IMG/VR virus record: IMGVR_UViG_3300042541_001760
Span: 186,001-250,000 of that record
Direction: 5' to 3' (one strand)
DNA: 64,000 nt
Positions 1,546-60,902 of this stretch are shown in pieces. Positions within the stretch are counted from its first letter, which is position 1, and each line of letters starts with the position of its first letter. Below the pieces are notes generated by a model. It saw only the letters and a list, made by a program, of their open reading frames with translations, ran no database searches and had not been told where the DNA came from. The position numbers and the translations under genes were made by a program.

Positions 1546-2346
1546 ATGAAATATATTAATTTAAATTCAAAAAAAGGTTTAGTAAATTTATTCGCCGATT
1601 ACATAGTTAAAGAGTTTAGTCACAATACTATGATACAAGTTTCAGATTGTGGGGCATTCTTCTTAGTCAAAGGTAAAACAGATAAAGAAGAGTATGTTGA
1701 TTTAAACGAAATAAAGAAAACATTCTTAAGTGACAATAAAAACAATTATCAATTTTTAGGTTTAGAGAATATTAATATCATTGATATTATTGAGTATGAT
1801 ACTGAAATCCTACCTAAAGATAGATGGCATTCGTTTTATCCCACTGAGAGACCTATATACACTCAATCTGTTATAGATAGACACGAAGACCTGATTAACA
1901 CAATAAACTCGTTAAATGAGGTTAATGGTAGGTCTGTTATTGAATCTGAGGAGGAGGTTATCGGTTTTGATTATTATGAATACCCATCTATGATTATAAC
2001 ATCAGAATTTCCTTATGGTTATGGTTTGGATACAGGTAGATTGGGTTACTACTATTCTGAATATATTGTCAATCATTTGTTTAACATTACCAACTCATCA
2101 AGTATTGATTTTAGATTCTCAAGTCAGGTTGATGATGATATGGAAGTTAAAATAGACATATCTTTATATGATAGTTTATTACCTAACGAATATATTAAAT
2201 CTATGGTGTTGGATGTATTTAATTTTGATGTGTCCGAACTTAAAAATGAATTACAATCTTATGACTTGTTGGATGACTTAAAGGATCCTTTTGGTAAGAA
2301 GCCTTGGTTGGTTAAGGATATGATTGGGGATATTGTTGTTATTTAA
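1546..2346 (+). CDS. Degenerate S-adenosylmethionine synthetase (MetK)-like protein lacking catalytic motifs
   Basis: Segments FFLVKGKTDKEEYVDLNEI, FPYGYG and VLDVFNFD...PFGKKPWLVKD resemble recalled MetK N-, central and C-terminal motifs; GHPDK and GGGAFSGKD absent. Confidence 0.5.
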   Translation: MKYINLNSKKGLVNLFADYIVKEFSHNTMIQVSDCGAFFLVKGKTDKEEYVDLNEIKKTFLSDNKNNYQFLGLENINIIDIIEYDTEILPKDRWHSFYPTERPIYTQSVIDRHEDLINTINSLNEVNGRSVIESEEEVIGFDYYEYPSMIITSEFPYGYGLDTGRLGYYYSEYIVNHLFNITNSSSIDFRFSSQVDDDMEVKIDISLYDSLLPNEYIKSMVLDVFNFDVSELKNELQSYDLLDDLKDPFGKKPWLVKDMIGDIVVI

Positions 2347-2683
2347 ATTTATGATTCCAACGGTGGATATCGTATTTATAAGTCCATAAAGGTGTTACCT
2401 CCTTTAATTTGTAAACCTCATCCAACCATTTTTTTATAGTTGATTGGATATCTCCGTAGTTAAGATGAAATAATAATTCAATTTTCGACCAAATATCGTC
2501 ATTGTGAATATAAACACGCTCAGTTTTCTTATCGTATTCCATTAAAACCTGATTATTATCATTTACATAATATATTGAGTCAGGATAATCCTTATGTTTC
2601 TTTTGTGTTAAATTACCAAAGTGCTTGTTTAACCACTTGATAACAACCCTCTCTAACTGATGTTCATTTACTTGTATGTTCAT
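2339..2683 (-). CDS. Paralog family protein, copy A (MNIQVN-x-QLERVVIKWLN family)
   Basis: Clear similarity to 2694..3038, 3035..3403 and 6750..7061. Confidence 0.85.
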   Translation of the reverse strand: MNIQVNEHQLERVVIKWLNKHFGNLTQKKHKDYPDSIYYVNDNNQVLMEYDKKTERVYIHNDDIWSKIELLFHLNYGDIQSTIKKWLDEVYKLKEVTPLWTYKYDIHRWNHKFK

Positions 2684-2693
2684 ATTCTATTTT

Positions 2694-3038
2694 TCAATTT
2701 CTAAGTTCTTCCCAATTGAAAATGGATGCGTTACTGTTTCTGATTGGTCTCACACCCTTCAATTTGTAAGTATCTTCCAACCAAACCTCAATAATTGATT
2801 TGATGTCATTGTGTCCAATGTGAAATATATTTTCCAAATGTGACCAAATATCACCATAATGAATATAGACATATTCACTTAGTTTAATGTATTGAAGTAT
2901 AACATTATTACTAGAATCCACATAAAATACCACATTAGGAAAATCCTTATGTTTCTTTGGTGTTAAGTTACCTAAGCGTTTGTTTAACCACTTGATGACA
3001 ACTCTCTCCATTTGATTTCTATTTACCTGTACGTTCAT
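2694..3038 (-). CDS. Paralog family protein, copy B
   Basis: Shares N-terminal MN(V/I)QVN..QxERVVIKWLN and C-terminal WLxxxYKLxxV motifs. Confidence 0.85.
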   Translation of the reverse strand: MNVQVNRNQMERVVIKWLNKRLGNLTPKKHKDFPNVVFYVDSSNNVILQYIKLSEYVYIHYGDIWSHLENIFHIGHNDIKSIIEVWLEDTYKLKGVRPIRNSNASIFNWEELRN

Positions 3039-3403
3039 ATTCTATTTTTTAATTTATAGGTCTCCTCCAACCAAATAAGGCCATCCGGCCAATTGAAATC
3101 ATTATCCATTGGTCTTACTCCCTCCAATTTGTATGTCTCTTTCAACCATACCTTCATAATTGAATGAATTACATGATAGTTAAGGTGAAATAACGATTCA
3201 ACTTTTCCCCAAATATGATTATAATCGATATAAAAATTTTCATACTCCGGATTGTATTCCATCATAACCTTATCATTAGAATTTACGTAAAATACTGAGT
3301 CAGGATAATATTTATGTTTCTTTTGCGTTAAATTACCAAAGTGATTGTTTAACCACTTGATAACAACCCTCTCTAACTGATGTTTATTTACTTGTATGTT
3401 CAT
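3035..3403 (-). CDS. Paralog family protein, copy C
   Basis: Same family; WLxETYKL motif present twice; ATGA-coupled to both neighbours. Confidence 0.85.
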   Translation of the reverse strand: MNIQVNKHQLERVVIKWLNNHFGNLTQKKHKYYPDSVFYVNSNDKVMMEYNPEYENFYIDYNHIWGKVESLFHLNYHVIHSIMKVWLKETYKLEGVRPMDNDFNWPDGLIWLEETYKLKNRI

Positions 3404-3996
3404 TTAATTAATAATATTTTACCATAAATATCTTTATACCCACGATTAAACCCCTTATATACTATATGGTATACGTAAACATCTTCCTGACATATTTGAC
3501 CCTTATAAGTTCCATTCCATTGTTTATTAATATCATCACTTTCAAATATTAATTCACCCCATCTATTAAATATTGTAATATTAAACTTATCAACACCGAA
3601 TCCATAAGCCCCGAAAGTTTCGTTTAGATTGTCATCATTTGGTGTAAATGCGTTTGGGACATAGATGCTTAACTCAGGACACCCCTCAACTTTTACAATC
3701 ACTTCGGTTTGTGAGATACAATTACCATTTGTGTATTGAGCAACTATGGTATACTGACCTGGATCATCCCACCTAACAAATAAAGTATTATCGTTTAATC
3801 CTTGTGCGTTCACACTAGGTTCTACTATCCAACGACTTTGATAACCCGGTAATCCATCAACCCAATATTTTTTATCAATATACAATGTATCACATAAATT
3901 TATTATCTGAGGTTCGTTACGTATCTGTGTGTTTAATGAACCACTTAATAATAAAATAAAGACAATTAATATTGTTTTTAAATATGGGTATGACAT
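3400..3996 (-). CDS. Exported protein with Ig/PKD-like domain and T9SS type-B (gliding motility-associated, CHU_C) C-terminal sorting domain
   Basis: Signal peptide ending LNT|Q; C-terminus IYVPNAFTPNDDNLNETF...IFNRWGELIFES...WNGTYKG...VYVY...GKILLIK. Confidence 0.9.
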   Translation of the reverse strand: MSYPYLKTILIVFILLLSGSLNTQIRNEPQIINLCDTLYIDKKYWVDGLPGYQSRWIVEPSVNAQGLNDNTLFVRWDDPGQYTIVAQYTNGNCISQTEVIVKVEGCPELSIYVPNAFTPNDDNLNETFGAYGFGVDKFNITIFNRWGELIFESDDINKQWNGTYKGQICQEDVYVYHIVYKGFNRGYKDIYGKILLIK

Positions 3997-3997
3997 T

Positions 3998-4564
3998 TTA
4001 ATCTGTGTATATAACCGGTGTTGATGGTGGTGGTGTTATCGTTATTGACCCACTACCACTCATAGGGCATCCATTAGCATCTGTTGATGTGAATGTGATT
4101 GGGTAAACTCCTGTCGCTAATCCTGTTGCGTTAAATACCGATCCGGTAACACCAGTTCCGGCAAATACAGGATTAGTCCCAAGTGGATTGGATGTTAAGT
4201 TTATTGTTCCGTTTCCTTGACATAAGGCATCAACTATAACAACAGGTATTGTTGGTGGTAGTACGGTTATCGTTGCCGAACTAGTTGAACTACATAAACC
4301 AATAGTTTTGGTTATGGTAATTGTGTATGTCCCCGCAACAGACCAAGTGACTTGTATTTGGTCACCACTTGATATTGATGTAAATGGAACTGCTGGTACT
4401 ATACTAAAAGTATATGTCGCCAATGGGTCAATAACTTGGTCACCATAAACTTGAACATCGTTCAAACAATAAGTGTTGTTATTTGCCGAATTCGGTGTTG
4501 GTACTTGTCCGTAACCTAATAGGGTTACCAATAAAAATCCAAGAATAATTATAATCTTTTTCAT
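3998..4564 (-). CDS. Exported two-Ig/PKD-like-domain protein
   Basis: Signal peptide GYG|Q; VTWSVAGTYTIT and GTGVTG..F...G.YPITFT.TDANGC motifs typical of Bacteroidota surface proteins. Confidence 0.8.
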   Translation of the reverse strand: MKKIIIILGFLLVTLLGYGQVPTPNSANNNTYCLNDVQVYGDQVIDPLATYTFSIVPAVPFTSISSGDQIQVTWSVAGTYTITITKTIGLCSSTSSATITVLPPTIPVVIVDALCQGNGTINLTSNPLGTNPVFAGTGVTGSVFNATGLATGVYPITFTSTDANGCPMSGSGSITITPPPSTPVIYTD

Positions 4565-4565
4565 A

Positions 4566-5942
4566 TTAATTTGTGTAAACTGATACTGTTATACCACCCG
4601 GTGGTATGTTTATTGTTTTATTTATTGTTGTTGATGTACAAGGTCCGTTAATGGTTAATGAAACATTATAAGTCCCTGATAATAAATATGCGTGAGTTGG
4701 ATTTTGTTGTATTGAAGTTTGACCATCACCAAAATTCCAAAAATACGTATATAAGTTATTCTGATTAACACAATTGTTAGTTATCGTAGGTGACTGAAAT
4801 GATGCGGTGGTGCAACTTATGGTTGGGTTGGGTAATATGTATTGGGGTTGGACATAAAATGACGCAAAGTTAGGTAATCCGAATCTACCTGCCCTACTCA
4901 CAAGTGGTATGGATAAGTCCGAGTAGTTACACCCGACTCCATAAACATTGGGATTATTTATAACGGATAATGATGTATTATTCCTCGCAACATAAACCTT
5001 ACCATCAGGTCCTAATTGAATTGACCCTATGAAAGCGCCTGCGTTTGATACGACTCTACGGCTAGCCTGTATCTGTGCTTGAGTTCCCGCACATAAATCC
5101 CATTGTAATAACATACCTTGGTTTGTCCCACCATATAATATTCTACCGTCAGGCGAGAATTCACATCCATAGATACCCGTCTCGTTTGATAGGGTAAATC
5201 CCCCTGATGCGAAACCTGTGGATGGGTCAAAATTATGTAACTCAATCTTATTCATTCCATAGTGACACGCCGCCAACCTTCTTCCGTTTGGTGATGCCTT
5301 TAATTGTCCATAAGCGGATTGGGGTACTCCTGATACAACAGACCCGGATATTGACCAAGTAGTAATACTAGGGACACCAACATTATCCACCAACCAAGAG
5401 GTAAATACATTTGTATTCCAATCGTGTGATAAGACCCAAACATCAACATTATTACAATGTCTGACGGCACATAACTTTTCACAGGATGGTGTTTTTAGTT
5501 GGGTATTCTTTGTTGTGACCGCACCTAACCCCACACTTAAACTCATATCAACAATTGAGTAACATATACCATTAACTCCAGCATCGTTATCCGAAGTGAA
5601 GATATAATATATGTTGGGTTGATTTGGTTTCTGAACTATGACGGCTGATTGTGTGGATGAAACATCACCGAATAAACCAGTACCATTTGTCATAACCAAA
5701 TGGTTTTTATTCCAAACGGTAATCCCGTTGGTATAGAATAATAGATTACCCAAATTATCTGATATGGTTGCCACCCCTTCAATAGTGGTTAAGGCTCCAT
5801 TGGTTAAAGCAACAGGAGACCCTGAGTTAAAGGTTATCCCCGCATTTGTCCCAAAATACCAATTAGTACTCGGACCGGGTATTTGTGAATATCCGATAAC
5901 ATAAAGTAATGAAAATAATATTATAAGTTTTAACTTTATCAT
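4566..5942 (-). CDS. Exported beta-propeller plus PKD domain protein
   Basis: Signal peptide GYS|Q; NWYFG...EGVATISD..GNLLFYTNG...NGTGL.G..SSTQSA N-terminus; PKD motif YFWNFGDG...NPTHAY..SGTYNVSLT. Confidence 0.85.
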   Translation of the reverse strand: MIKLKLIILFSLLYVIGYSQIPGPSTNWYFGTNAGITFNSGSPVALTNGALTTIEGVATISDNLGNLLFYTNGITVWNKNHLVMTNGTGLFGDVSSTQSAVIVQKPNQPNIYYIFTSDNDAGVNGICYSIVDMSLSVGLGAVTTKNTQLKTPSCEKLCAVRHCNNVDVWVLSHDWNTNVFTSWLVDNVGVPSITTWSISGSVVSGVPQSAYGQLKASPNGRRLAACHYGMNKIELHNFDPSTGFASGGFTLSNETGIYGCEFSPDGRILYGGTNQGMLLQWDLCAGTQAQIQASRRVVSNAGAFIGSIQLGPDGKVYVARNNTSLSVINNPNVYGVGCNYSDLSIPLVSRAGRFGLPNFASFYVQPQYILPNPTISCTTASFQSPTITNNCVNQNNLYTYFWNFGDGQTSIQQNPTHAYLLSGTYNVSLTINGPCTSTTINKTINIPPGGITVSVYTN

Positions 5943-6607
5943 TCCTTAATACGAATGGTTAGACCAACGTCTAATCCTATCATATAAGTATTAAATGAAT
6001 TGTCAATAACTATTGGTGTTAAATTTGTTCTACCATAAACTGATGTAGTTAGTCCAACACCCTCAATTATATTCATATACAAACCACCTCTAACAAAAAC
6101 CCCTAAATAAGTTTTAACCGTTTTATAATCGTATATTTCAACATCATATGTAAAATCATTACGATTTGTTATTATCCCATCACCAAATATCATATTTAAA
6201 GATGGACCTATTTCAAAATATAAACTTTGACCAATGGATGGGTAGTATGTCAATAAGGGAGATATGGAAACACCATCTATTTGTATTGTCTTATCAATAT
6301 ACTTTAACTCATTAAAATTAACACCATTCGGTATGATTCTAATATCCTGATTTATTCTTGTTTTATTTGTCTCCAATTTAATACCCCAAAATTTATTCTG
6401 ATAATAACCATTCTCAAAATATCTCGCAAACGAAAAACCATATGAACTAGCATAGGTTATTCTTCTTTCATTTCTTAGATCGGTAAATGATGTGTTCGGT
6501 ATGTTTAATGTTGTAATCCCTCGATTAAAATTACCACTAATGGTATAGACTTGGGATAAGAGTGGGGACGACAGTAATACGCATAAAACCAGTAAAAACT
6601 TTTTCAT
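5939..6607 (-). CDS. Outer-membrane beta-barrel protein (PorT-like, about 8 strands)
   Basis: Signal peptide LLS|Q; amphipathic strands, YFEIGPSLNMI motif, terminal strand IGLDVGLTIRI; 222 aa. Confidence 0.65.
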   Translation of the reverse strand: MKKFLLVLCVLLSSPLLSQVYTISGNFNRGITTLNIPNTSFTDLRNERRITYASSYGFSFARYFENGYYQNKFWGIKLETNKTRINQDIRIIPNGVNFNELKYIDKTIQIDGVSISPLLTYYPSIGQSLYFEIGPSLNMIFGDGIITNRNDFTYDVEIYDYKTVKTYLGVFVRGGLYMNIIEGVGLTTSVYGRTNLTPIVIDNSFNTYMIGLDVGLTIRIKE

Positions 6608-6660
6608 AAGATATAGTATATGTTAGTTTAGTTGCCATTCGTAATACGCACTGATTTTAC

Positions 6661-6668
6661 TATAAATA
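6661..6668 (-). promoter_or_regulatory. Putative late promoter TATTTATA driving the 6607-to-2339 operon
   Basis: Exact motif 53 nt upstream of ATG 6607, just downstream of a terminator. Confidence 0.6.
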
Positions 6669-6680
6669 TCTTAAAAACAA

Positions 6681-6705
6681 AAAATCCACTAAAAAAGTGG
6701 ATTTT
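6681..6705 (-). terminator. Intrinsic terminator
   Basis: AAAATCCACT-AAAAA-AGTGGATTTT perfect 10-bp stem with flanking T-run on minus strand. Confidence 0.75.
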
Positions 6706-6749: not shown

Positions 6750-7061
6750 CTAATCATAAGTGGCACCAAAAACTTCTTGAACGTCAATATCGTATGTTTC
6801 GTACATCCATTTTGGGACTATAGTTCTAACATCAACATAAGTTAATTTAAACATATTAACCAAACTCATAAGAATATCATTATTCACATGTAAAATACCA
6901 TTATCAGTATTATAATCCATCATCTGTTTATTATTATGGTTAAAATAAAATACCGTATCGGTAAAATATGAAATCTCTTTTAGTGTTAAGTTACCGTAGT
7001 GTTTATTTAACCACTTGATAACTACTCTTTCCAATTGATGTTTATTTACTTGTATGTCCAT
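6750..7061 (-). CDS. Paralog family protein, copy D
   Basis: MDIQVNKHQLERVVIKWLNKHYGNLT N-terminus. Confidence 0.85.
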   Translation of the reverse strand: MDIQVNKHQLERVVIKWLNKHYGNLTLKEISYFTDTVFYFNHNNKQMMDYNTDNGILHVNNDILMSLVNMFKLTYVDVRTIVPKWMYETYDIDVQEVFGATYD

Positions 7062-10095: not shown

Positions 10096-11466
10096 TTAAT
10101 TATCAAGAAAAAAGTAACCATTACCTTGTGATATTAAATTTTCCCTAACCGATTCAGGTAAGGTTTCCTCTAACTTATCTCCTGAACCATAAATGTTAAG
10201 GAAGGTCAGGTCTTTTAAGTTTTCTATTGAACTTGGTAATGATTTTAATTGTTTGTTATTAGGTAGTATAAGATAACCTAAATTTGTTAGTTTTCCAAGT
10301 TCATCAGGTAATGATTTAACAATATTTTCTAATTGTAAAGTCGTTAAATTTGTAAATTCGCCTATTGATGCTGGAATGTCTATCGCAAGATCTTCTTTAG
10401 ATTTATTAATGAATGATAACATATCTATGTCTCTTGGTAAACTTTCAAACAATTCCTCAAAGCCATATAGAGCCACGAATTTACCCGCTGAACTATCAGG
10501 GTAAGTTATGTTAACTTGGTTCGTAGATTGATTAACCAATCCTTTTGCGAATTCAGGTTTGAAGTATTCTTTAAGGTCGGGTGCTTTATTATTTAAAAAA
10601 TCAACCAACTCAATTCTATGGTCTAATCTATCCATAAACTGATTAGATGGGAAGTGAAATTGGAATCTGTCTTGGGGTAATCCTGTTCTTCCTCCGACAG
10701 GTCCACCCTCATCGTTAGATAATAACACATAAAGAGGTCCGTCTTTAACATATCCCCTAAAATAACTTGAACTTGGTGGTGATGTACACCATCTTGATTC
10801 ACCCTTTTCGTAGTCATAATAACCACCATACCAAGATGCCGCTTCTTGACCTTTTTCACCCCCATCTGAAATCTTAACCACTGTATAGTTGTCTCCAACA
10901 TATTCAACGGTCGCACCAGGATGTGAAAAACCTTTTCTTTCTTTACGAATTTCTTTTTTAACTTCTGACTTAGCTAATTTATTCTTAATCTTCTCAGGTA
11001 GTTCAAAATTATTTAGGAATTTGAAAAGTTTAGTTGGTGTAAATTTATTGATATCTCTCCATACAACAGGAAAATATTGTTTGTATTTTGTGAATTTTTT
11101 AAGGTCATCTGTTAATTTAAACAAATCCTCCATAAATAAATCACGTGCTCTTTCAACACTACCTGAGTCGTCAGTTTCGGGACTCTCATAGTTCTTTAAC
11201 ATCCAATTAACATATTGACCCGGTTGAATCTTTTTTAAATTCTCAGGACTAAAATCCGCATCGTTAAAATCCGCAGGTTTTTTTGTGGTTGGATCGGCAA
11301 ATATGATATCTGCCAATTTATTTATATCCATTAAAGCTTTTGAGCCTTTACCGGGTATTACATCTTTCTTAGGTTTTGTATATTTGTCAATCAATACATC
11401 AAAACGACTTTGTTCCGTTAGAATATTACGTAACAATGTGTTTAATTTTATATTTTTAATTTTCAT
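10096..11466 (-). CDS. Protein with central WCTS domain and C-terminal leucine-rich repeats
   Basis: SRWCTS motif; IPASIGEFTNLTTLQL, LPDELGKLTNLGYLIL, LPSSIENLKDLTFLNI repeats. Confidence 0.85.
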   Translation of the reverse strand: MKIKNIKLNTLLRNILTEQSRFDVLIDKYTKPKKDVIPGKGSKALMDINKLADIIFADPTTKKPADFNDADFSPENLKKIQPGQYVNWMLKNYESPETDDSGSVERARDLFMEDLFKLTDDLKKFTKYKQYFPVVWRDINKFTPTKLFKFLNNFELPEKIKNKLAKSEVKKEIRKERKGFSHPGATVEYVGDNYTVVKISDGGEKGQEAASWYGGYYDYEKGESRWCTSPPSSSYFRGYVKDGPLYVLLSNDEGGPVGGRTGLPQDRFQFHFPSNQFMDRLDHRIELVDFLNNKAPDLKEYFKPEFAKGLVNQSTNQVNITYPDSSAGKFVALYGFEELFESLPRDIDMLSFINKSKEDLAIDIPASIGEFTNLTTLQLENIVKSLPDELGKLTNLGYLILPNNKQLKSLPSSIENLKDLTFLNIYGSGDKLEETLPESVRENLISQGNGYFFLDN

Positions 11467-11496: not shown

Positions 11497-13311
11497 TTAA
11501 TACCAAATATAAAAACCGGGACCTTCTTCTTTCATCCTTGCTCTTACTTCTTCGGGTATGATTATATCAGGATTAGATCCCTCCAATAGGATGAAATCTA
11601 ACTCTTCTAATTTTGCTAATGATTTGGGTAATGACTTTAGTCTAGGGTTGTTGGGTAATCCTAAAACAGATAACCTACTTAGATTACCAATTGATTCGGG
11701 TAACTCCTCAACAACGCCAGTCAAACTTAAATTCTCAAGATTACTAAATCTATCTATGTCGTTTGGTATATCTATTTTTATTGACCCATCTTTACTCTTA
11801 TTCTTTATTACTAACTCAGTGATGGTGTCAGGTAATGAATCAAAAAGTTCTTTTAATCCATATAGGGCAATGTATTTACCTTCGTTTGATGATGGTAACT
11901 CAATTACTGCTGAGTCCTTGAATACAAAATTGGTTGCGAACTTAGTTTTAAGGGATTCTTTTAGTTTGGCCATCATAGGTAAATTTAGTATGGCTATCTC
12001 ACCTTCACTTAAACTACCAATATTCTTGTTAGATAAAGCCTCAACTTTTTTCTTTAGGTAGTATTTCATTGTGTCAGAATCAGAGTTCCTAACTTGACCT
12101 GCGGTTAATTCGTGACCTAAAGCAATATATTTCTTTCTTAAATTTGGTGTTAGGCTATTGAATTGTTCATCACTTACTTTCCTATTAACAATCTCTAACC
12201 AATACTCAACCTCATTTTCATTAGCGAAAGTATCAAAGAGATTATCACCGACTTTTGAGTTTCTTATTTTATCTATAAGTACTTTTTCGTCAGATGTTAA
12301 TGGTTTTGGTTTGAATACGCCCTCCAATCCTTTTAATTTAGGTATTTTAGTTAATATCTCACTCCAAGGAATATTGTTATGACCTGAATATCTACCTGAG
12401 TTTGTACCATCCGCCAATGACATATCCCCATCAGGGTCAACCAATATAACAACCGCAAAGTTTACATCAGAATAATCCTTATCTTGGTCTATCACATAGT
12501 ATAATGTTCTCTCGTTGTCTAATCTATAGTTATAGAATAAGTTTGATGTTCCCTCACGAGATGTACACCAACTTCTACCATTCTTTAACTTAATACACTG
12601 GTCTCTCGTCTTTGGTTGGAATATTAATAAGTTATTCTCATTGTATACTTCCTCAATATCAGATACATCTGTTTTTGTTTCTGTGTCGTCGGATTTAACT
12701 GACGCATCAATATAATGTTCAAAATCTGTAAAACTTAGTGAGGTTGCCAATGGCATTTGCTCATATAACTGATTAAAGTTATCCAAGTACGCTTGAACAT
12801 AATACATTATTACATCTTCCGTTAGATTTGGATTCTCTTTCTTAAATTTCTCTGACAATATTTTTAGTAGAAACTTGGGGTAAGATTGGTCAATAACTTT
12901 TTGTAAATCCAAGAATTTATACTTGGTGATGTCCTTACCTTTACCGAATGCGTCCTCAATCTCCAAAAACTTTCTAATGGTTTTCTTAAGAGACACATTT
13001 TCAATACCCCCTTCTTTCTTTTTGAACTCCTTAAAAAGATCGGATTCTCTTTTTTGAGTTCTCTTTAAAGCAATAATGTTTTTTAATTCACTATATGAAT
13101 ATCTTGATAAATCTCTTTTCTCAACAGGTAACCCGTTTTTGTATTTTTCAAAATCGTCAATGTATCCACCTATGGTTTTTTCGTCATCCTTAGTATCTTG
13201 TAAAAATTTACCGATTAACTTCGCTTTTATTTTATCGGATACTTCTTTAAGTAACTTTTTAGGTAACGGGCTTTCAACCACAACGGACGATAATAAATTT
13301 ACTAACTTCAT
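11497..13311 (-). CDS. Paralogous WCTS-domain plus leucine-rich-repeat protein
   Basis: RSWCTS motif; LPESIGNLSRLSVLGL, LPKSLAKLEELDFILL repeats; C-terminal region aligns with 10096..11466. Confidence 0.85.
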   Translation of the reverse strand: MKLVNLLSSVVVESPLPKKLLKEVSDKIKAKLIGKFLQDTKDDEKTIGGYIDDFEKYKNGLPVEKRDLSRYSYSELKNIIALKRTQKRESDLFKEFKKKEGGIENVSLKKTIRKFLEIEDAFGKGKDITKYKFLDLQKVIDQSYPKFLLKILSEKFKKENPNLTEDVIMYYVQAYLDNFNQLYEQMPLATSLSFTDFEHYIDASVKSDDTETKTDVSDIEEVYNENNLLIFQPKTRDQCIKLKNGRSWCTSREGTSNLFYNYRLDNERTLYYVIDQDKDYSDVNFAVVILVDPDGDMSLADGTNSGRYSGHNNIPWSEILTKIPKLKGLEGVFKPKPLTSDEKVLIDKIRNSKVGDNLFDTFANENEVEYWLEIVNRKVSDEQFNSLTPNLRKKYIALGHELTAGQVRNSDSDTMKYYLKKKVEALSNKNIGSLSEGEIAILNLPMMAKLKESLKTKFATNFVFKDSAVIELPSSNEGKYIALYGLKELFDSLPDTITELVIKNKSKDGSIKIDIPNDIDRFSNLENLSLTGVVEELPESIGNLSRLSVLGLPNNPRLKSLPKSLAKLEELDFILLEGSNPDIIIPEEVRARMKEEGPGFYIWY

Positions 13312-40139: not shown

Positions 40140-41753
40140 TTATGGGTTGTTAATAGACATAACATTAGTTTCTGGCGCCCCTGTGACATTACAACAAGTA
40201 CATCCATTAATTGATGAGGTACTTAGTATAAACACTTTATCGGTTGATTTAACGTAACAAGACAAGGGACTTAATTTAAGTATTGAAGTTATAACCGTTC
40301 CTGATATCACATCCACCCCTGATATTGTAATATTGTTATACGTTAAAGTGGTTGCAGTTGAATATTCCTTAGTGTTTGGTGGGCATATGCCGGTTGTTGA
40401 TCCAGATTGTGTTGAAGATGCGGTTGTTGGTGTTATACCTATAGGGACTCCATTTTTATGTACTTGAACAGTATTAGTTATACTTCCAAACGCCGGATTG
40501 GTCGCCACCATAAAATTATTATATTCGGATAAATCAAAAGTTATTATTGTACCGGATGGTAAGTTTGATATAATGTTATTATTTATGTCTCTAACAACAA
40601 CTTTAAATGTTAATTTTTTCTGTCCCACCCCTGTTGATACTATTGTATTATCTATTGTTAAATTATACGAATTTGTTGCCGGTCCGGCCGGAACGATTGC
40701 GTTCTGTTGTCTTACTGTTGACGATCCATCTTGTACCCAAATACTATAAGTACCCGCCGGTAAGTTATTAAACATTGGTGATTGTTGTGTTGTAATACCT
40801 CCATCTTTTGAATATATTACGGGTGGTTGACCGTTAAGGGGATTTATAATTAAAGATCCCGTAGAGTCGTTAACACAATTAGGGGCACTAATAGTTGGTG
40901 GATTTAAACTCATCACAGGCGCATTACAAGCCCCCGCATATGTGGTGGCATTACCCGCTGGTCCGAATAAAGTCCAACCACCAATTGGTGGAATACTCGC
41001 GTTCGTGTTTATTATCAATGTTGAGTCAATATCAACAAACCAATAAGCTTGTGATAATCCACCCCATCTCATATCGAGAGTACCAGAAATCCAAGTGGGT
41101 TTACCATTTACAATACTCCCCGTTGGTGTGAATGTATATAATGTTGTAATATTACCTGTAGTATATTGTAAACATAAATTAGGGTACACAACAGGAATTG
41201 GTGTCGGTGTTGGTGTAGGAGTTGGTGATGGTGTTTGACTAGGAACAATTAAAGAACAGGTTGTTGTTGCCGTATAATCAGACCCTCCGTTTGGCCAATT
41301 GTAGTCGGTTACTGTTACAGTATACACCCCATTAGAAGTGGCATTAGTTAAAGTAGGACCTAAAGTTCCTGTACTCCAAAGAATTTTATAAGGTGGTGTA
41401 CCACCCGATACTAACATAGTAATACTATTATTTAATAGATTTGGACTACAACTAATAGTCATTGGCGTTATTGTAACAATATCACACTGATTAACTCCTG
41501 TAACTCTATTACAGACATACAATGCGGTACATTCACCACAATTACCATAAGAACCCTCTAAAGTGACTCCTGGCGATAAAAAAGAATATGTGGGTGAATC
41601 AGGATACAATGAACCAGAACTAATAACAGTACAACAACCACTGAAATAATTGGGTATAATTACATACTTTATATCACCAATCGTTAATGTTGGAGAATTG
41701 GTTAGTGTAAACGTAAAACTGGAATCGCAACAGGATTTGAAATAATGGGTCAT
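40140..41753 (-). CDS. Putative tail fibre protein with Cys-rich N-module, two SprB-like repeats and PT linker
   Basis: VSGGTPPYKILWS...GVYTVTVTD; PNC...TGSL...NGQPP...FNNLPAGTYSIWVQD. Confidence 0.7.
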   Translation of the reverse strand: MTHYFKSCCDSSFTFTLTNSPTLTIGDIKYVIIPNYFSGCCTVISSGSLYPDSPTYSFLSPGVTLEGSYGNCGECTALYVCNRVTGVNQCDIVTITPMTISCSPNLLNNSITMLVSGGTPPYKILWSTGTLGPTLTNATSNGVYTVTVTDYNWPNGGSDYTATTTCSLIVPSQTPSPTPTPTPTPIPVVYPNLCLQYTTGNITTLYTFTPTGSIVNGKPTWISGTLDMRWGGLSQAYWFVDIDSTLIINTNASIPPIGGWTLFGPAGNATTYAGACNAPVMSLNPPTISAPNCVNDSTGSLIINPLNGQPPVIYSKDGGITTQQSPMFNNLPAGTYSIWVQDGSSTVRQQNAIVPAGPATNSYNLTIDNTIVSTGVGQKKLTFKVVVRDINNNIISNLPSGTIITFDLSEYNNFMVATNPAFGSITNTVQVHKNGVPIGITPTTASSTQSGSTTGICPPNTKEYSTATTLTYNNITISGVDVISGTVITSILKLSPLSCYVKSTDKVFILSTSSINGCTCCNVTGAPETNVMSINNP

Positions 41754-42766: not shown

Positions 42767-45061
42767 TTAACAAGATACACAATTTATATTATATAATATG
42801 GATACTTGTACCGTAATGTTTTGGTTTGATAAAGCGTCCGTGGTTTCTTCACAACTTGTGTTAACCGTAATTGTATTATTGTTGGTGTCAACTATAACTT
42901 CACCAATCCCTGTTACGTCACTTAGTAGTGTATCAACAGTATTATACCAACTACTATTTGCTGGAACGTCGTTTAAAGTTGTGGCGGTATAAAATGATTG
43001 AGAGTAAGAGTTTCCAGCCACTGTGGCAACCGCAGAGAATGTTGCCGAACTTAATAAACAATCCGTACAACCATTAGTTAAATCCAAATACCCTTCAAGT
43101 AACATTTTACCTAAAGTTCTTTCTGTAATACCACCACTTGATATCGTACTTTCACAAATATTGTACTCGCTCAAGTTTGATAATATAAATGATCCTGTTA
43201 CTATTACCGATTTAGTTATCGTACATCCGTCGGTGTCTTGTACTGTTAAAGTATATGTCCCTGCGGATAAATTATCAATTGCCGTACCTGTTTGACCATT
43301 GACATTTGATGACCATGTTAGGGTAAATGGGGGTATTCCTTGGAATATGTTAGCGAATATCTCTCCATTGTATCCGTTAGTGGAGCTTGTTGGTATTAAT
43401 ATAAAATTTATTTGCTCGCTCTCATCTATGTAGAAATTACTAGTTGATATACACCCATTACTATCCGTTACCGTCGCCTGATAATAACCTGACGATAAAT
43501 CATTAAAAGTATATGAACTCAATGGTATTTGACCTGATGGTGGAATAGGAAGTCCATTACCTCCTTGAATTGAATATATAAATGGTGATGTTCCGCCTGT
43601 CGTTTTAAATATCTTTACTATTCCATTATTACCCCCGCAAGTAGTTCCAGATGCTTGTGTCGTAACATTATATGATAAAGTTGACTGAACAACAACAGTA
43701 CCGCTATAAGTACAAATACCATCAGTTATTGTTAGTGTGTATGTATCAGGAAATAGATTATTGAACGAAGTATTTAAACTTTGTTGTGGTCGATTATCCG
43801 AATCCCCATTACTTTTTTTAAGTGAATAATCATAACTAGAATTTGGATTACCATTCAATGTTATTGAAATACTACCATTACTATTACCACAAACACTACT
43901 AATGACGTTAGTTGTTGCGACCGCAAAACTATTTGGTTGAGCTAAACTTACTTGTGTGTTAACACTACAAAGGGACGAATCGGTTACGGTTATATCATAA
44001 ATACCCCCATATAAATTAGGAAAGGTATATGTTTGTTGGTAAGATATATCAATATAATTTATTGATGGTATGTAATACCTATATGGTGGAGTACCATTTA
44101 TTACCGTTATCTGTATTGCCCCGTTGGGGGCAAAACAAGTCGGCGGTGTTGGAGTTATAGGCCCTAATGACACCGGAGCCACATCGGTAATAAGCGCATT
44201 TTTGGTTGATGTACAACCTTGTGCATCTGTTATAGTAACACTATAATCGCCAGCGGTTAATCCTGTTATTGAAACTCCAGTTAACGATACATTATTTTCT
44301 AATAATCCTGGTGTTGATGATGACCATAAATAAGTATATGGAGCAACTCCGGTTAATCCCGTAATAAATATTCTACCAACACCAGTACTAACATTACCAC
44401 AATTTGAGCTATTAACTGAATATAACCCATAATTTAATAGTGTGGAATTCTGTATTATAGAATTTTCACTTCTACCTGTACACCCTCCTCCGTCATCGGC
44501 AATTACATAATACATACCGTACGGTAAATTATCGAAAACGAATGTATCGGAGTTGGTGGATCCTGTTCTTATTAAATCAGGTTGATACGGTTCATTTGGT
44601 GGTGTATTAATAGGAGGTACTCTATTGTTATTATTTTCTAAATATAATTTATATGTGGCCAAACCGTTAGTATTAGCAACCGTTGCGGTTAAAGACCCAT
44701 TTACTAAACCACAAGTAGTTGGGGTTACGTTAGTAATCGACACACAACTAGATGCCGAAGAAACATATATGTTAAGTGTTGTTCTATTGTTTTGTGTTAA
44801 CTCGGTAGGTCCTCCACAAGAGTCATTTATTTCTAGTACATATAAACCTGCCGGTAGATTACTATATGTTCTCGGTCCATTTAAAATACCTGTTTCAACC
44901 GAAGGTCCTCCACCCTCATTTGGGGACCAAGGATTTGGTAGATACCAAGTAATACTCATCGGTTCTGATGTCGTAGATAGATTGAGGGTAAATGACCCCG
45001 ATGCATTATTTTGACAGTCACCAACTACACTAAAATCACTAAAATTAAAATCGCAAGCCAT
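42767..45061 (-). CDS. Structural protein with about seven SprB-like repeats
   Basis: Repeats C...NG.I.I....GTPPY.Y.W.......L..G.Y.VTVTD..GC. Confidence 0.8.
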   Translation of the reverse strand: MACDFNFSDFSVVGDCQNNASGSFTLNLSTTSEPMSITWYLPNPWSPNEGGGPSVETGILNGPRTYSNLPAGLYVLEINDSCGGPTELTQNNRTTLNIYVSSASSCVSITNVTPTTCGLVNGSLTATVANTNGLATYKLYLENNNNRVPPINTPPNEPYQPDLIRTGSTNSDTFVFDNLPYGMYYVIADDGGGCTGRSENSIIQNSTLLNYGLYSVNSSNCGNVSTGVGRIFITGLTGVAPYTYLWSSSTPGLLENNVSLTGVSITGLTAGDYSVTITDAQGCTSTKNALITDVAPVSLGPITPTPPTCFAPNGAIQITVINGTPPYRYYIPSINYIDISYQQTYTFPNLYGGIYDITVTDSSLCSVNTQVSLAQPNSFAVATTNVISSVCGNSNGSISITLNGNPNSSYDYSLKKSNGDSDNRPQQSLNTSFNNLFPDTYTLTITDGICTYSGTVVVQSTLSYNVTTQASGTTCGGNNGIVKIFKTTGGTSPFIYSIQGGNGLPIPPSGQIPLSSYTFNDLSSGYYQATVTDSNGCISTSNFYIDESEQINFILIPTSSTNGYNGEIFANIFQGIPPFTLTWSSNVNGQTGTAIDNLSAGTYTLTVQDTDGCTITKSVIVTGSFILSNLSEYNICESTISSGGITERTLGKMLLEGYLDLTNGCTDCLLSSATFSAVATVAGNSYSQSFYTATTLNDVPANSSWYNTVDTLLSDVTGIGEVIVDTNNNTITVNTSCEETTDALSNQNITVQVSILYNINCVSC

Positions 45062-59063: not shown

Positions 59064-60902
59064 TCAACTGAAATTAACCGTTTTTAGGTTTTTAACCCTA
59101 ACTCTAATATCTCTGCCGGGATATCTAACTTGATATATCTGTGTCGGTTCAGCAAATATCGTATCATCAATAAGTTCTATTTGTCTTGTTGTTGAATCCA
59201 AATATCTTTGTGAGGTTTGTGATGATGAGTATTGACCCCCAACTTCATTTATAACATCTATTGCCGCCACACTAATAACACCGTTTAAAGTTTGTACTTG
59301 TCTTCTTATTTCAGATATATAGACATTCTCACCCATCTCTCTAACTGATGGTGAGAAGTATTTAGTTACAATATCAACCATTTGTGAAATAACCACACCT
59401 TGGTTTTGACTTGAATCCAATACAACCGATATGTCCATACTAAGGTCAACAACTTGAGCACTTTCTACGGATATATAGTCATTAATCATTCGGTAGTTTG
59501 AAAGGTAGTTAGCAATGTTTGTTTTAAGTGTGTTTGAAATAACATTACTTAATCCTCCACTTGAATCGTATGATAATATCTGAATTTTAATTTTATTCTC
59601 TTGTTCGGTTACCGCTACTTTGGCGGGTGCTCCGAATTGTGAAGGCATTTTTCTAATTAAAGATTCGTAGTCATTAATTGTTACCGCTCTGTTTTGTGCC
59701 GCAAAATTGTATGTTACATAGTTTCTTACTTCCTCAATAGTTGGTACATTTGCCCCACCTATTGCGGCGGTTGTATTATTACATGTTAATGTATTAACTA
59801 CCGTTGTATTTTGTGTTTGTGATGGACCGTTAACGAAGAATGAGACCGTACCTAATTGATTAAGGACATTGACACCTAAATTGGTTGATATACCACCACC
59901 AACTCTGTATTGGATGAATAATGTGGTGTTAGCCTTCAATGTACTACCCAAAGCAAAGTTGTTTGAGTATTTTTGTAGATTCATGGGGTTACCATTGGCG
60001 GCAAAATCTCTTAATTGTTCGTCCGCCGATTGACTACCCCCACCGAATATCATTTTAAAGAAACTCTCAGGAGTAAATTCTGTTATAAATCTTGTAGGCG
60101 CCGGAACATATTTACCCACCTTTACACCAGGTTGGTCTGATACTTTAGTTGGATCCTCAACAAAAACTTTGTCCTGTATTAAAGCATCAACTTCGTACCA
60201 TCTATTATCTAATCCCAAGAATTCATTATCTGTTGGTATATTCGCATATTGTGTTCCGTCTTTTAATAATACACTTGTTACACCTAAAACATTTTTTTCA
60301 GGTAAGAATAACTCAAAAAATGGTCTTACATCGTTTGATGATATAACTCTTTTGAACACTTTAGTAATACCGTTAACTACGGTTTCTCTTTTTGTAATCG
60401 TATAATTAATAATCTTATTATTGGCATCAAAGTTTGGAACTTTGGTTCTGTTTGGAAACCCTTCGTTATTATATGGTGATGAAAAATCTATGTCATATAC
60501 GGTCTCAAATGTTTGACCCGCACCATTTATCTGTGACCCCCTTCTTAGGATACCACAATACCTAATATCCTCTTTATCTCCGAAAGCCGGAACAGTTATT
60601 GAGAAATCAACTAACGCAACTGATGGTCTTTGTCCGGGTATTTTAAGTCCATAAGTTCTGGCAATGTTGTATATTGATGACCTCTGTTGAGCGTATTGTA
60701 ATACCGTTTCTTGAATACTTCTATCAATATTAAATTGTAGGTTGTCTGATACCGCAGCATTTAAATCAAGTAACACCGAGAATGTTGAAGCGTCATTTAC
60801 GTTAGATAACAAATCAGGATAGTATGTTTTAACAAAATTAATTAATTCCGTTCTTATCCCCTGAAAATCTCTCGTAGTATAGGATATTTTTTTATTTGCC
60901 AT
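59064..60902 (-). CDS. Baseplate wedge protein (T4 gp6 / baseplate J-like)
   Basis: ISYTTRDF.GIR.ELI, ARTYG.K..G.RPS, QNRAVTINDY, MPSQFG.PAKV; adjacent to gp25. Confidence 0.85.
   Translation of the reverse strand: MANKKISYTTRDFQGIRTELINFVKTYYPDLLSNVNDASTFSVLLDLNAAVSDNLQFNIDRSIQETVLQYAQQRSSIYNIARTYGLKIPGQRPSVALVDFSITVPAFGDKEDIRYCGILRRGSQINGAGQTFETVYDIDFSSPYNNEGFPNRTKVPNFDANNKIINYTITKRETVVNGITKVFKRVISSNDVRPFFELFLPEKNVLGVTSVLLKDGTQYANIPTDNEFLGLDNRWYEVDALIQDKVFVEDPTKVSDQPGVKVGKYVPAPTRFITEFTPESFFKMIFGGGSQSADEQLRDFAANGNPMNLQKYSNNFALGSTLKANTTLFIQYRVGGGISTNLGVNVLNQLGTVSFFVNGPSQTQNTTVVNTLTCNNTTAAIGGANVPTIEEVRNYVTYNFAAQNRAVTINDYESLIRKMPSQFGAPAKVAVTEQENKIKIQILSYDSSGGLSNVISNTLKTNIANYLSNYRMINDYISVESAQVVDLSMDISVVLDSSQNQGVVISQMVDIVTKYFSPSVREMGENVYISEIRRQVQTLNGVISVAAIDVINEVGGQYSSSQTSQRYLDSTTRQIELIDDTIFAEPTQIYQVRYPGRDIRVRVKNLKTVNFS

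What the first reader, a model, noticed from the sequence alone, without database searches (positions are those of the whole stretch)
3998..5942. A split adhesin: CTD-less partners share a C-terminal (V/I)YT(N/D) motif
Seen: the 458-aa and 188-aa proteins carry domains that in Bacteroidota usually precede a type-B CTD on one long polypeptide. Here they lack a CTD and end in similar tails (ITVSVYTN, STPVIYTD). Only the last gene has the CTD. Inference: the shared terminal strand may be a docking or donor-strand motif that lets CTD-less subunits hitchhike on, or polymerise with, the CTD-bearing subunit or the barrel.
Basis: inference. Interest (0 to 1): 0.65.

Follow-up and report, generated by a model that had tools for sequence, protein, structure and literature searches.

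The report
Phage surface protein split into docking pieces
A giant freshwater phage of Bacteroidota carries a secreted surface protein split into separate genes; each upstream piece keeps a short conserved end-peptide that appears to plug into the next piece, so only the last piece needs the export signal.

Summary
On the minus strand, 4566-5942 (458 aa; beta-propeller plus PKD) and 3998-4564 (188 aa; two Ig-like domains) each have a signal peptide, lack a CTD and end in ...VSVYTN and ...PVIYTD. Only 3400-3996 (198 aa) carries a type-B T9SS CTD.

The window is not bacterial. It lies in a 261-kb jumbo phage found in many lake metagenomes.

The tails are not chance:
- Only 3 of 368 ORFs in the phage end this way. 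All three are secreted; the third lies outside the window.
- The tails are conserved across both protein families and co-vary within a locus (YTN/YTD, FTN/FTN, IHN/QHN, NSN/NSN).
- The same tail classes occur on unrelated "head" proteins in many phages, each time beside a small stand-alone Ig+CTD protein.
- In unsplit phage relatives, the tail aligns with the linker strand just before the next Ig-like domain.
- A controlled complex prediction puts the 188-aa tail on the Ig domain of the CTD protein (ipSAE 0.66; best control 0.22).

Best reading: a T9SS cargo broken by gene fission and reassembled by strand docking onto a CTD carrier. Co-secretion is inferred, not shown. The 222-aa barrel looks dispensable. 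What the assembly does for the phage is unknown.

The parts
5939..6607 (-). 222-aa signal-peptide protein, probably a small 8-stranded outer-membrane beta-barrel; an accessory first gene of the cassette
   Evidence: No Pfam or NCBIfam family. Language-model neighbours are OMP_b-brl-type proteins. The AF2 model has low confidence (pLDDT 55) but shows 8 long strands. Only 14 homologue clusters, all near relatives. In run X8 a contig joins 5932 to 6674 with 3 other letters between, replacing the stretch that holds this gene.
4566..5942 (-). 458-aa 'head' subunit: signal peptide, highly conserved beta-propeller (about residues 21-365), PKD domain (about 375-446), free C-terminal tail
   Evidence: AF2 gives pLDDT 90 overall, with the tail (449-458) at about 55 and no secondary structure. 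Best fold match is the YVTN propeller+PKD structure 1l0q. 3363 relatives at E<=0.001 among the 8000 candidates scored.
4569..4598 (-). C-terminal tail of the 458-aa protein (GGITVSVYTN; motif VYTN = 4569-4580)
   Evidence: Tail classes are conserved across the family, including short forms without PKD. They co-vary with the partner's tail.
3998..4564 (-). 188-aa 'stalk' subunit: signal peptide, two Ig-like domains, C-terminal tail; its first domain is homologous to the acceptor domain of the CTD protein
   Evidence: hhalign of A3 against A4 gives 98% probability, E 1.3e-13, over residues 1-103.
4001..4030 (-). C-terminal tail of the 188-aa protein (PPSTPVIYTD; motif IYTD = 4001-4012), the predicted docking strand
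   Evidence: Residues 179-188 form the confident interface with the CTD protein. I185 (nearly invariant) contacts residues 44-46, 84, 86, 97 and 99.
3400..3996 (-). 198-aa stand-alone carrier: signal peptide, one Ig-like acceptor domain, type-B T9SS CTD
   Evidence: CHU_C and TIGR04131 above cut-off. Relatives in 422 viral contigs. Among the best 80 loci, 36 carry small stand-alone forms and 35 carry long fused forms.
3682..3927 (-). Ig-like acceptor domain of the carrier (residues 24-105)
   Evidence: Predicted contacts at residues 24-26, 30, 42-47, 49, 52, 54, 84, 86-88, 90, 92-97 and 99.
3409..3663 (-). CHU_C / type-B CTD proper (residues 112-196)
6681..6705 (-). Terminator-like hairpin just upstream of the cassette, separating it from the preceding gene
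   Evidence: consensus scan only.

Best explanation
The four genes are a cassette of a 261-kb freshwater jumbo phage that infects a Bacteroidota host.

Three of them (458 aa, 188 aa, 198 aa) are the products of gene fission of a T9SS type-B surface protein. Bacteria and other phages make this protein as one chain: head domain, Ig-like stalk, Ig+CTD.

Each break lies one beta-strand into the next Ig-like domain. The upstream fragment therefore keeps that strand as a free C-terminal tail (hydrophobic-x-x-N/D at the C-terminus; here VYTN and IYTD). The downstream fragment starts, after its own signal peptide, where the strand ends.

All fragments are exported by Sec. In the periplasm the tail of the 188-aa stalk docks as an added strand onto the Ig domain of the 198-aa carrier. 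By homology of the acceptor domains and colinearity with unsplit proteins, the tail of the 458-aa head docks onto the first Ig domain of the stalk. So would the tail of a second head encoded at G000:C1:106149-107138.

The assembled complex is then carried through the host T9SS by the single CTD and displayed on the infected cell.

Shown by computation: fission, tail conservation and covariation, homology of the tail to a cis linker, and predicted stalk-to-carrier docking. Inferred: head-to-stalk docking, co-secretion, surface display. The benefit to the phage is unknown; masking receptors or otherwise remodelling the cell surface late in infection is my best guess.
For: Identity of the DNA and the genes:
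- Phage identity: virus record, 261,052 bp; Baseplate_J, SprB-repeat fibre-like proteins, RNR; near-identical DNA in 24 lake or freshwater runs.
- Domains and CTD.
- Fused bacterial homologues of about 560-2230 aa ending in a CTD.

Tail conservation and covariation:
- Conservation.
- Covariation within loci.
- Permutation test on 30 dereplicated loci: mean best identity over the last 4 residues is 2.1, against 1.38 +/- 0.12 when shuffled (0 of 5000 shuffles reach it). The protein immediately upstream of a small CTD gene ends in N or D in 27 of 32 loci, against a 15% background.
- Genome-wide, 3 of 368 ORFs carry the motif, and all three have signal peptides.

The tail is a detached cis strand:
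- The tail aligns with '...TVYPxP-xIxxIxx[ND]-x|FxELC', the segment preceding the Ig+CTD unit in unsplit phage proteins.
- A 734-aa unsplit protein is colinear with head / tail-like linker / stalk / tail-like linker / Ig+CTD.
- The third head, c329, is homologous both to split heads and to the N-termini of fused proteins.
- The acceptor domains of the stalk and the carrier are homologous.

Structure predictions:
- The tail is unstructured in the monomer model, so it is not docked in cis.
- Complex prediction (ESMFold2): ipSAE 0.66, best of 3 controls 0.22. That mark was reached by 58 of 80 solved complexes and 2 of 110 mismatched pairs; these counts hold only roughly, because my own alignments and three chains were used. 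The three runs agree in at least 93% of contacts, and the partner's pLDDT is at least 81. The interface is tail residues 179-188 against three segments of the carrier's Ig domain (42-47, 84-88, 92-99).

Literature: efficient secretion by a type-B CTD can need up to 235 aa, extending beyond the conserved domain (PMC12618676). That fits an Ig+CHU_C unit acting as a bare signal.
Against: - There are no experimental data and no RNA evidence.
- The complex score is the model's own confidence and covers only the stalk-to-carrier pair. The head's tail was not among the confident contacts when the stalk was present. With the stalk replaced, the score was only 0.22.
- Covariation is confounded by shared ancestry of the loci.
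- Transport of a non-covalent complex by T9SS has no precedent that I could find.
- Several large phage contigs carry the propeller protein with a tail but no detectable stalk or carrier in the DNA held.
- No PorP/SprF-like shuttle gene is found next to the CTD gene.
Confidence: 0.6

Rival explanations
1. Hub model. All tail-bearing proteins (458 aa, 188 aa and the 329-aa head elsewhere in the genome) compete for the single acceptor site on the 198-aa CTD carrier. The carrier then exports them one at a time, and no head-stalk-carrier chain forms.
For: The tails of heads and stalk are nearly the same. With the stalk replaced, the carrier still made 40 confident contacts (score 0.22), presumably with the PKD+tail fragment. 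Some loci have three tail-bearing proteins and one carrier (L119).
Against: The stalk's first domain is homologous to the carrier's acceptor domain. In all the split loci I examined, the gene order and the unsplit proteins follow head-stalk-carrier, with a tail-like linker before each acceptor. In the commonest tail class, stalk tails (PIQH[ND]) differ consistently from head tails (PI[SNI]H[ND]).
Confidence: 0.2
2. The tails are a sorting or recognition signal read by a host factor, such as a periplasmic or outer-membrane protein, a protease, or the T9SS itself. They are not read by the phage partner.
For: Tail classes are lineage-specific and could track host groups. Some contigs carry only the propeller protein with a tail.
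Against: The tail is homologous to an internal linker strand of unsplit proteins, where it cannot be a C-terminal signal. Confident partner docking is predicted, and the controls fail. In 27 of 32 dereplicated loci the protein immediately upstream of a small stand-alone Ig+CTD gene ends in N or D.
Confidence: 0.1
3. The tails are inert leftovers of gene fission. The CTD-less proteins act on their own in the periplasm, and only the 198-aa protein reaches the surface.
For: Fission alone would leave linker remnants. No experiment shows binding.
Against: The hydrophobic position -4 and the terminal N/D are kept across families at 30-40% identity, while the preceding linker varies. The tail is kept when the PKD domain is lost. 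Unrelated cargo in a locus share the tail class. The most conserved tail residue is the most buried in the predicted interface.
Confidence: 0.08
4. The complex is not a displayed adhesin but a plug. The CTD steers a bulky non-covalent complex to the T9SS translocon and jams it, shutting down host secretion and gliding, for instance to exclude superinfecting phages.
For: This assumes that phages of the host use T9SS-dependent surface proteins as receptors (my own knowledge, not checked here). In crAss-like and T4-like relatives the module sits among late genes, next to tail and lysis genes.
Against: Unsplit homologues of the same architecture in bacteria and phages look like ordinary cargo. Nothing here speaks to jamming.
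Confidence: 0.07

Closest known systems
T9SS type-B CTD substrates of Bacteroidota (SprB-type adhesins; TIGR04131 / PF13585), with PorP/SprF-like shuttles
   Same: Sec signal peptides. A CHU_C/TIGR04131 domain sits at the end of the last protein. The head-stalk-CTD architecture matches long bacterial homologues. The Ig+CHU_C unit is about the size of the extended signal that type-B secretion needs (PMC12618676).
   Different: The passenger is on separate polypeptides without any CTD. The CTD protein has no passenger of its own. No sprF/porP-like gene is adjacent. The module is encoded by a phage.
Donor-strand complementation in chaperone-usher pili and C-terminal strand insertion in Bacteroidota type V pili (FimA/Mfa1)
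   Same: A terminal beta-strand of one subunit is predicted to add to an Ig-like fold of the next. The donor is C-terminal, as in type V pili (my own knowledge).
   Different: There is no usher, chaperone, lipoprotein precursor or activating protease. The assembly is a short hetero-chain that ends in a secretion signal, not a polymer. The strand derives from gene fission of a single-chain protein.
Hitchhiker co-export (Tat substrates lacking a signal peptide; multisubunit T2SS cargo)
   Same: Proteins without the export signal would leave the compartment bound to a partner that has it. T9SS, like Tat and T2SS, moves folded proteins (PMC9251779).
   Different: The secretion system is different. 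The held literature has no report of this for T9SS. Here the binding element is a portable 6-8-residue tail.
Phage-encoded T9SS cargo ('Cryophage', Nat Commun 2020, PMC7468147)
   Same: A phage genome encodes proteins with T9SS sorting domains, presumably secreted by the host system.
   Different: Those are single-chain type-A CTD enzymes. No split subunits, stand-alone CTD or tails were described.
YVTN beta-propeller + PKD tandem of an archaeal S-layer protein (PDB 1l0q)
   Same: It is the best fold match of the 458-aa protein (Foldseek E 2.9e-16).
   Different: Sequence identity is 15% and TM-scores are 0.39-0.45. The match says nothing about the tail.

Membership tests
T9SS type-B CTD substrate (TIGR04131 / PF13585) | C-terminal CHU_C / TIGR04131 domain above the curated cut-off | tested here: met
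   Met only by the 198-aa protein: 56.6 bits against 27, and 53.4 against 35. The 458-aa and 188-aa proteins have no such domain, so they are not members themselves.
T9SS type-B CTD substrate (TIGR04131 / PF13585) | N-terminal Sec signal peptide | tested here: met
   All four proteins start with a basic residue or two, a hydrophobic stretch and then Gln. This was read from the sequence; no signal-peptide predictor was run.
T9SS type-B CTD substrate (TIGR04131 / PF13585) | Cognate PorP/SprF-like shuttle gene next to the substrate gene (common, not universal; PMC12618676) | tested here: not met
   No neighbour matches a PorP/SprF family. The 222-aa protein has no Pfam hit and models as an 8-strand barrel. 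Orphan substrates exist, so this does not exclude membership.
T9SS type-B CTD substrate (TIGR04131 / PF13585) | Secretion depends on the T9SS | not testable with these tools
   Needs expression in a host with and without a working T9SS.
Donor-strand complementation assemblies (chaperone-usher or type V pili) | A strand from another subunit is added to an Ig-like fold | tested here: inconclusive
   The prediction puts tail residues 182-187 against residues 42-47, 84-88 and 92-99 of the carrier (ipSAE 0.66, best control 0.22). Unsplit relatives supply the same strand in cis. I could not inspect coordinates, and there is no experimental structure.
Donor-strand complementation assemblies (chaperone-usher or type V pili) | Dedicated chaperone and usher, or lipoprotein pilin precursors with proteolytic activation | tested here: not met
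   No such families were found in the cassette or its flanks. The system works like these assemblies but is not a member.
YVTN/WD40-type beta-propeller + PKD surface proteins | Propeller fold followed by a PKD domain | tested here: met
   AF2 model with pLDDT 90. Foldseek's top hit is 1l0q, and many 7-bladed propellers follow. PKD_4 scores 45.3 bits.

The most novel reading that the evidence does not exclude
Bacteroidota phages carry a natural trans-acting secretion tag for the T9SS. A small stand-alone Ig+CTD carrier protein would export any periplasmic protein that ends in a matching 6-8-residue tail. This would let phages mix and match heads (propeller, NIDO-like and others) on a common stalk and anchor. 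It would be the first case of hitchhiking through the T9SS, and a ready-made peptide-tag and carrier pair for protein display in Bacteroidota.
Probability: 0.4. Interest if true: 0.8.

Novelty: new variant of a known kind. Interest (0 to 1): 0.72.

Why it matters
T9SS substrates are defined by a CTD on the same chain, and the held literature has no example of a CTD acting in trans. If the tails dock as predicted, three things follow.

1. CTD-based predictions undercount the T9SS secretome.
2. Phages of Bacteroidota, including crAss-like, T4-like and jumbo phages from lakes, routinely place modular, non-covalently assembled proteins on their host's surface. About half of the 80 closest viral loci are split in this way.
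3. A natural split-Ig tag and acceptor pair with lineage-specific specificity classes becomes available. It can be tested directly by tail-swap experiments and could serve as a tool.

The result also dates and explains a recurrent gene fission, with the break points fixed at a strand boundary.

Tried and rejected
- **Tail folds back onto its own propeller (velcro strand, or mimic of the YVTN blade).** Rejected. The AF2 monomer leaves residues 449-458 unstructured at pLDDT about 55. The same tails occur on proteins without a propeller. The blade motif stays constant while the tails vary.
- **Broken gene, frameshift or assembly artefact.** Rejected. Each ORF has its own signal peptide, the same boundaries recur in many independent contigs, and four runs show no indels at the junctions.
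- **Covalent Spy-tag-like isopeptide.** Not supported. No invariant Lys lies in the contact segments of the carrier family. In fused relatives the terminal N/D position can be Y, S or E.
- **Barrel as the docking partner or a PorP/SprF shuttle.** No support. There is no family match, the barrel occurs only in close relatives, one lake-run contig has a form of the locus without it, and the model is too poor for a fold search.
- **Similar DNA in the phage collection.** None found.
- **Pattern search with the stalk alignment A3.** Failed for lack of a conserved stretch.
- **Propeller gene in five large viral records that have stalk+carrier.** None found.
- **Carrier in records that have only the propeller.** One record has a fused 760-aa frame with a CTD; the others have nothing. 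All of these records are fragments.
- **Tracing the IYKQ-class stalk to the 435-643-kb contigs that carry an IYK[QE]/IYRE-tail propeller.** Inconclusive.
- **Residue covariation between tail and acceptor.** It follows lineage and cannot be separated from ancestry.
- **Head-to-stalk docking.** Not scored, because the single complex job scores only one partner.
- **RNA evidence.** No RNA run holds the stretch.
Full report
**What is at the coordinates**

The minus strand of 3400-6607 holds four tightly coupled genes:
- 5939-6607: 222 aa.
- 4566-5942: 458 aa.
- 3998-4564: 188 aa.
- 3400-3996: 198 aa.

The junctions read ATGA, TAA-T-ATG and TAA-A-ATG. A terminator-like hairpin at 6681-6705 lies just upstream of the first gene.

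Each protein starts with a signal peptide that ends before a Gln. The 458-aa protein matches PKD near its end. The 198-aa protein matches CHU_C and TIGR04131 above their cut-offs. The 188-aa protein gives only a sub-threshold PKD hit, and the 222-aa protein matches nothing.

The cassette has 36-39% G+C against about 29% in the flanks.

**Where it comes from**

The window is part of a 261,052-bp virus record that CheckV rates 89% complete. The window also encodes a Baseplate_J protein, SprB-repeat fibre-like proteins and a ribonucleotide reductase.

Near-identical DNA for the cassette occurs in 24 lake or freshwater metagenome runs from 24 studies; none of them is RNA. Contigs from four of these runs cross both gene junctions with no insertion or deletion. 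The split is therefore real in nature.

**The proteins and their relatives**

The 458-aa protein belongs to a very well conserved family: 3363 proteins at E<=0.001 among the 8000 candidates scored, most of them 450-470 aa. With an alignment, AF2 folds it at pLDDT 90 into a beta-propeller plus a PKD domain. The last ten residues are unstructured, at pLDDT about 55. The best fold match is the YVTN propeller+PKD structure 1l0q.

In Bacteroidota genomes the same propeller+PKD unit mostly forms the N-terminus of proteins of about 560-2230 aa that end in a type-B CTD. A few are short stand-alone forms of about 380 aa.

In viral contigs and prophage-like regions the unit is instead a separate gene. 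It is usually followed by a homologue of the 188-aa protein and then a small CTD protein.

**The tails are conserved and co-vary**

Across the propeller family the C-terminus falls into classes: VS[VI]YTN, TGPIYK[QE], SPINHN, SINL[NQ] and PPILNSN. Short forms that lack the PKD domain still end in PILNSN or GPIxHN. The 188-aa family ends in IYTD, IFTN, INSN, LNSN and similar; the Ile at -4 is nearly invariant.

Within a locus the two tails match:
- VSVYTN with PVIYTD.
- IQIYTN with PIIFTN.
- TSVFTN with PTIFTN.
- SPIIHN with GPIQHN.
- TSINLN with GVIQIN.
- LSQINHN with LGLIEHN.

In crAss-like phage contigs an unrelated secreted protein takes the place of the propeller and again shares the tail: LNSN with FNSN, LNKN with INSN, IYRD with IYTD.

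A search with the small CTD protein found relatives in 422 viral contigs. Of the 80 best loci, 36 carry a small stand-alone Ig+CTD protein and 35 carry a long single-chain one.

In 32 dereplicated split loci, the secreted protein immediately upstream of the CTD gene ends in N or D in 27 cases. The background in the same loci is 15%. Within-locus tail identity over the last four residues averages 2.1, against 1.38 +/- 0.12 for shuffled loci. None of 5000 shuffles reaches the observed value. The loci are related to each other, so this figure is not a probability.

In the phage itself only 3 of 368 ORFs end in [IVLF][YF]T[ND]. They are the two in the finding and a third secreted protein of 329 aa at G000:C1:106149-107138, which ends ...VELYTD.

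**The tails are the detached first strand of the next domain**

The 329-aa protein is homologous to tail-bearing heads of other split loci, such as a 314-aa protein ending PISHN and a 320-aa protein ending SIYRD. It is also homologous to the first 260 residues of the long single-chain phage CTD proteins.

One such 734-aa protein is colinear with the split set:
- head: residues 1-262;
- linker: ...IIVGPIVFSD|TAC...;
- stalk: residues 404-555;
- linker: ...PVILDITSD|QFYQIC...;
- Ig+CTD: residues 563-734.

When the tails of split proteins are aligned with the fused proteins, they fall exactly on these linker segments. The mature N-terminus of the small CTD proteins begins where the linker ends.

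The first domain of the 188-aa protein is homologous to the Ig domain of the 198-aa protein (hhalign 98%, E 1.3e-13). Both break points are therefore of the same kind.

**Docking prediction**

I folded three chains together: the mature 188-aa protein, the PKD+tail part of the 458-aa protein, and the mature 198-aa protein as the scored partner.

- The verdict was that the model supports binding but does not show it.
- ipSAE was 0.66, and the best of three controls was 0.22.
- That mark was reached by 58 of 80 solved complexes and by 2 of 110 mismatched pairs. These counts hold only roughly here, because I used my own alignments and three chains.
- The three runs agree in at least 93% of contacts, and the partner's pLDDT is at least 81.

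The confident interface is residues 179-188 of the 188-aa protein (plus 113-115 and 177) against residues 24-26, 30, 42-47, 49, 52, 54, 84, 86-88, 90, 92-97 and 99 of the carrier. These residues fall in three segments of its Ig domain. The nearly invariant I185 makes the most core contacts.

Replacing the partner gave scores of 0.00 and 0.02. Replacing the 188-aa protein gave 0.22 with 40 confident contacts. That hints that the other tail can use the same site less well. Head-to-stalk docking was not scored.

**Best explanation**

This is a phage T9SS type-B surface protein that has undergone fission at strand boundaries. It reassembles by strand docking, so that one CTD serves the whole assembly.

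Literature in the held library states that efficient type-B secretion can need up to 235 residues, extending beyond the conserved domain, and needs a PorP/SprF-like shuttle (PMC12618676). It reports phage-encoded type-A T9SS cargo once (PMC7468147). Searches of that library for T9SS together with 'hitchhik', 'piggyback' or 'donor strand' turned up no paper on the subject, judged from titles and abstracts.

Co-secretion and surface display are inferences. The purpose for the phage is unknown.

**The barrel**

The 222-aa protein has no family match, and its language-model neighbours are small outer-membrane barrels. Its AF2 model shows eight long strands but at low confidence. It has only 14 homologue clusters, all near relatives. 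In run X8 a contig joins 5932 to 6674 with three other letters between, replacing the stretch that holds the gene. Nothing ties it to the tails.

**Open points**

- Several contigs of 318-643 kb carry the propeller protein alone, with tails such as TGPIYKQ, TGPIYRE or GPIEHN. A stalk+carrier pair whose stalk ends ...SPIYKQ exists on other fragments of large phages. I could not place the two in one genome.
- The mature N-terminus QVPTPN of the stalk family is strongly conserved, and I have no explanation for it.
- Whether the heads bind the stalk (chain) or the carrier (hub) remains open.

Noticed in passing
G000:C1:106149-107138 (outside the window; L187:2150-3139): A third secreted protein (329 aa) ends in the same tail class (...VELYTD). 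It is homologous to heads of split loci and to the N-termini of single-chain phage CTD proteins. It has no Pfam family; its language-model neighbours include NIDO and IgGFc-binding N-terminal domain clusters.
   Followed up: yes
G000:C1:88743-91319 (outside the window; L188:2743-5319): The phage also encodes an unsplit 858-aa type-B T9SS cargo: signal peptide, four SprB repeats, two PKD domains and CHU_C.
   Followed up: partly
window 2339-2683, 2694-3038, 3035-3403, 6750-7061 (all minus strand): Four paralogues of a 103-122-aa family (M[ND]IQVN+HQLERVVIKWLN...) flank the cassette on both sides. More copies lie elsewhere in the genome, and relatives flank the cassette in related phages (L004, L009). 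There is no family match and the function is unknown.
   Followed up: no
window 5933-6673: In lake run X8 a contig joins 5932 to 6674 with 3 other letters (TAT) between. That population variant therefore lacks the 222-aa barrel gene.
   Followed up: partly
window 3400-6000: The cassette has 36-39% G+C against about 29% in the rest of the window. This may reflect later acquisition from a host or the Gly/Pro/Thr-rich composition.
   Followed up: no
window 40140-41753 and 42767-45061 (minus strand); 59064-60902: Large proteins with weak SprB-repeat matches (one below, one just at the Pfam cut-off) lie next to a Baseplate_J protein. They may be tail fibres built from the same repeat as the host's gliding adhesin.
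   Followed up: no
window 10096-11466 and 11497-13311 (minus strand): Two adjacent proteins (456 and 604 aa) have C-terminal leucine-rich-repeat matches below the Pfam cut-off. They are conserved in synteny in related phage contigs (L004).
   Followed up: no
L103, L104, L106, L111, L117 (crAss-like contigs): The head/stalk/carrier module sits between tail-fibre-like genes and a lysis cassette (two small membrane proteins and a Peptidase_M15_3 endolysin, followed by a protein with a hydrophobic N-terminus that may be a lipoprotein). In L104, L106, L111 and L117 a conserved secreted protein of 146-166 aa without a tail (ending ...KYN[VAY]..) lies next to the head and stalk genes; L103 has only a non-secreted 162-aa protein there.
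   Followed up: no
L006, L007, L008 (contigs of 435, 643 and 318 kb): Very large phage-like contigs carry the propeller protein with a conserved tail but no stalk or carrier nearby. The partners may lie elsewhere or be absent.
   Followed up: partly
window 4447-4507 (residues 20-39 of the 188-aa protein): The mature N-terminus QVPTPN(P/S)ANG..YC is strongly conserved across the stalk family, yet it has no counterpart in the unsplit proteins, where only about 2 residues separate the linker from the Cys.
   Followed up: no
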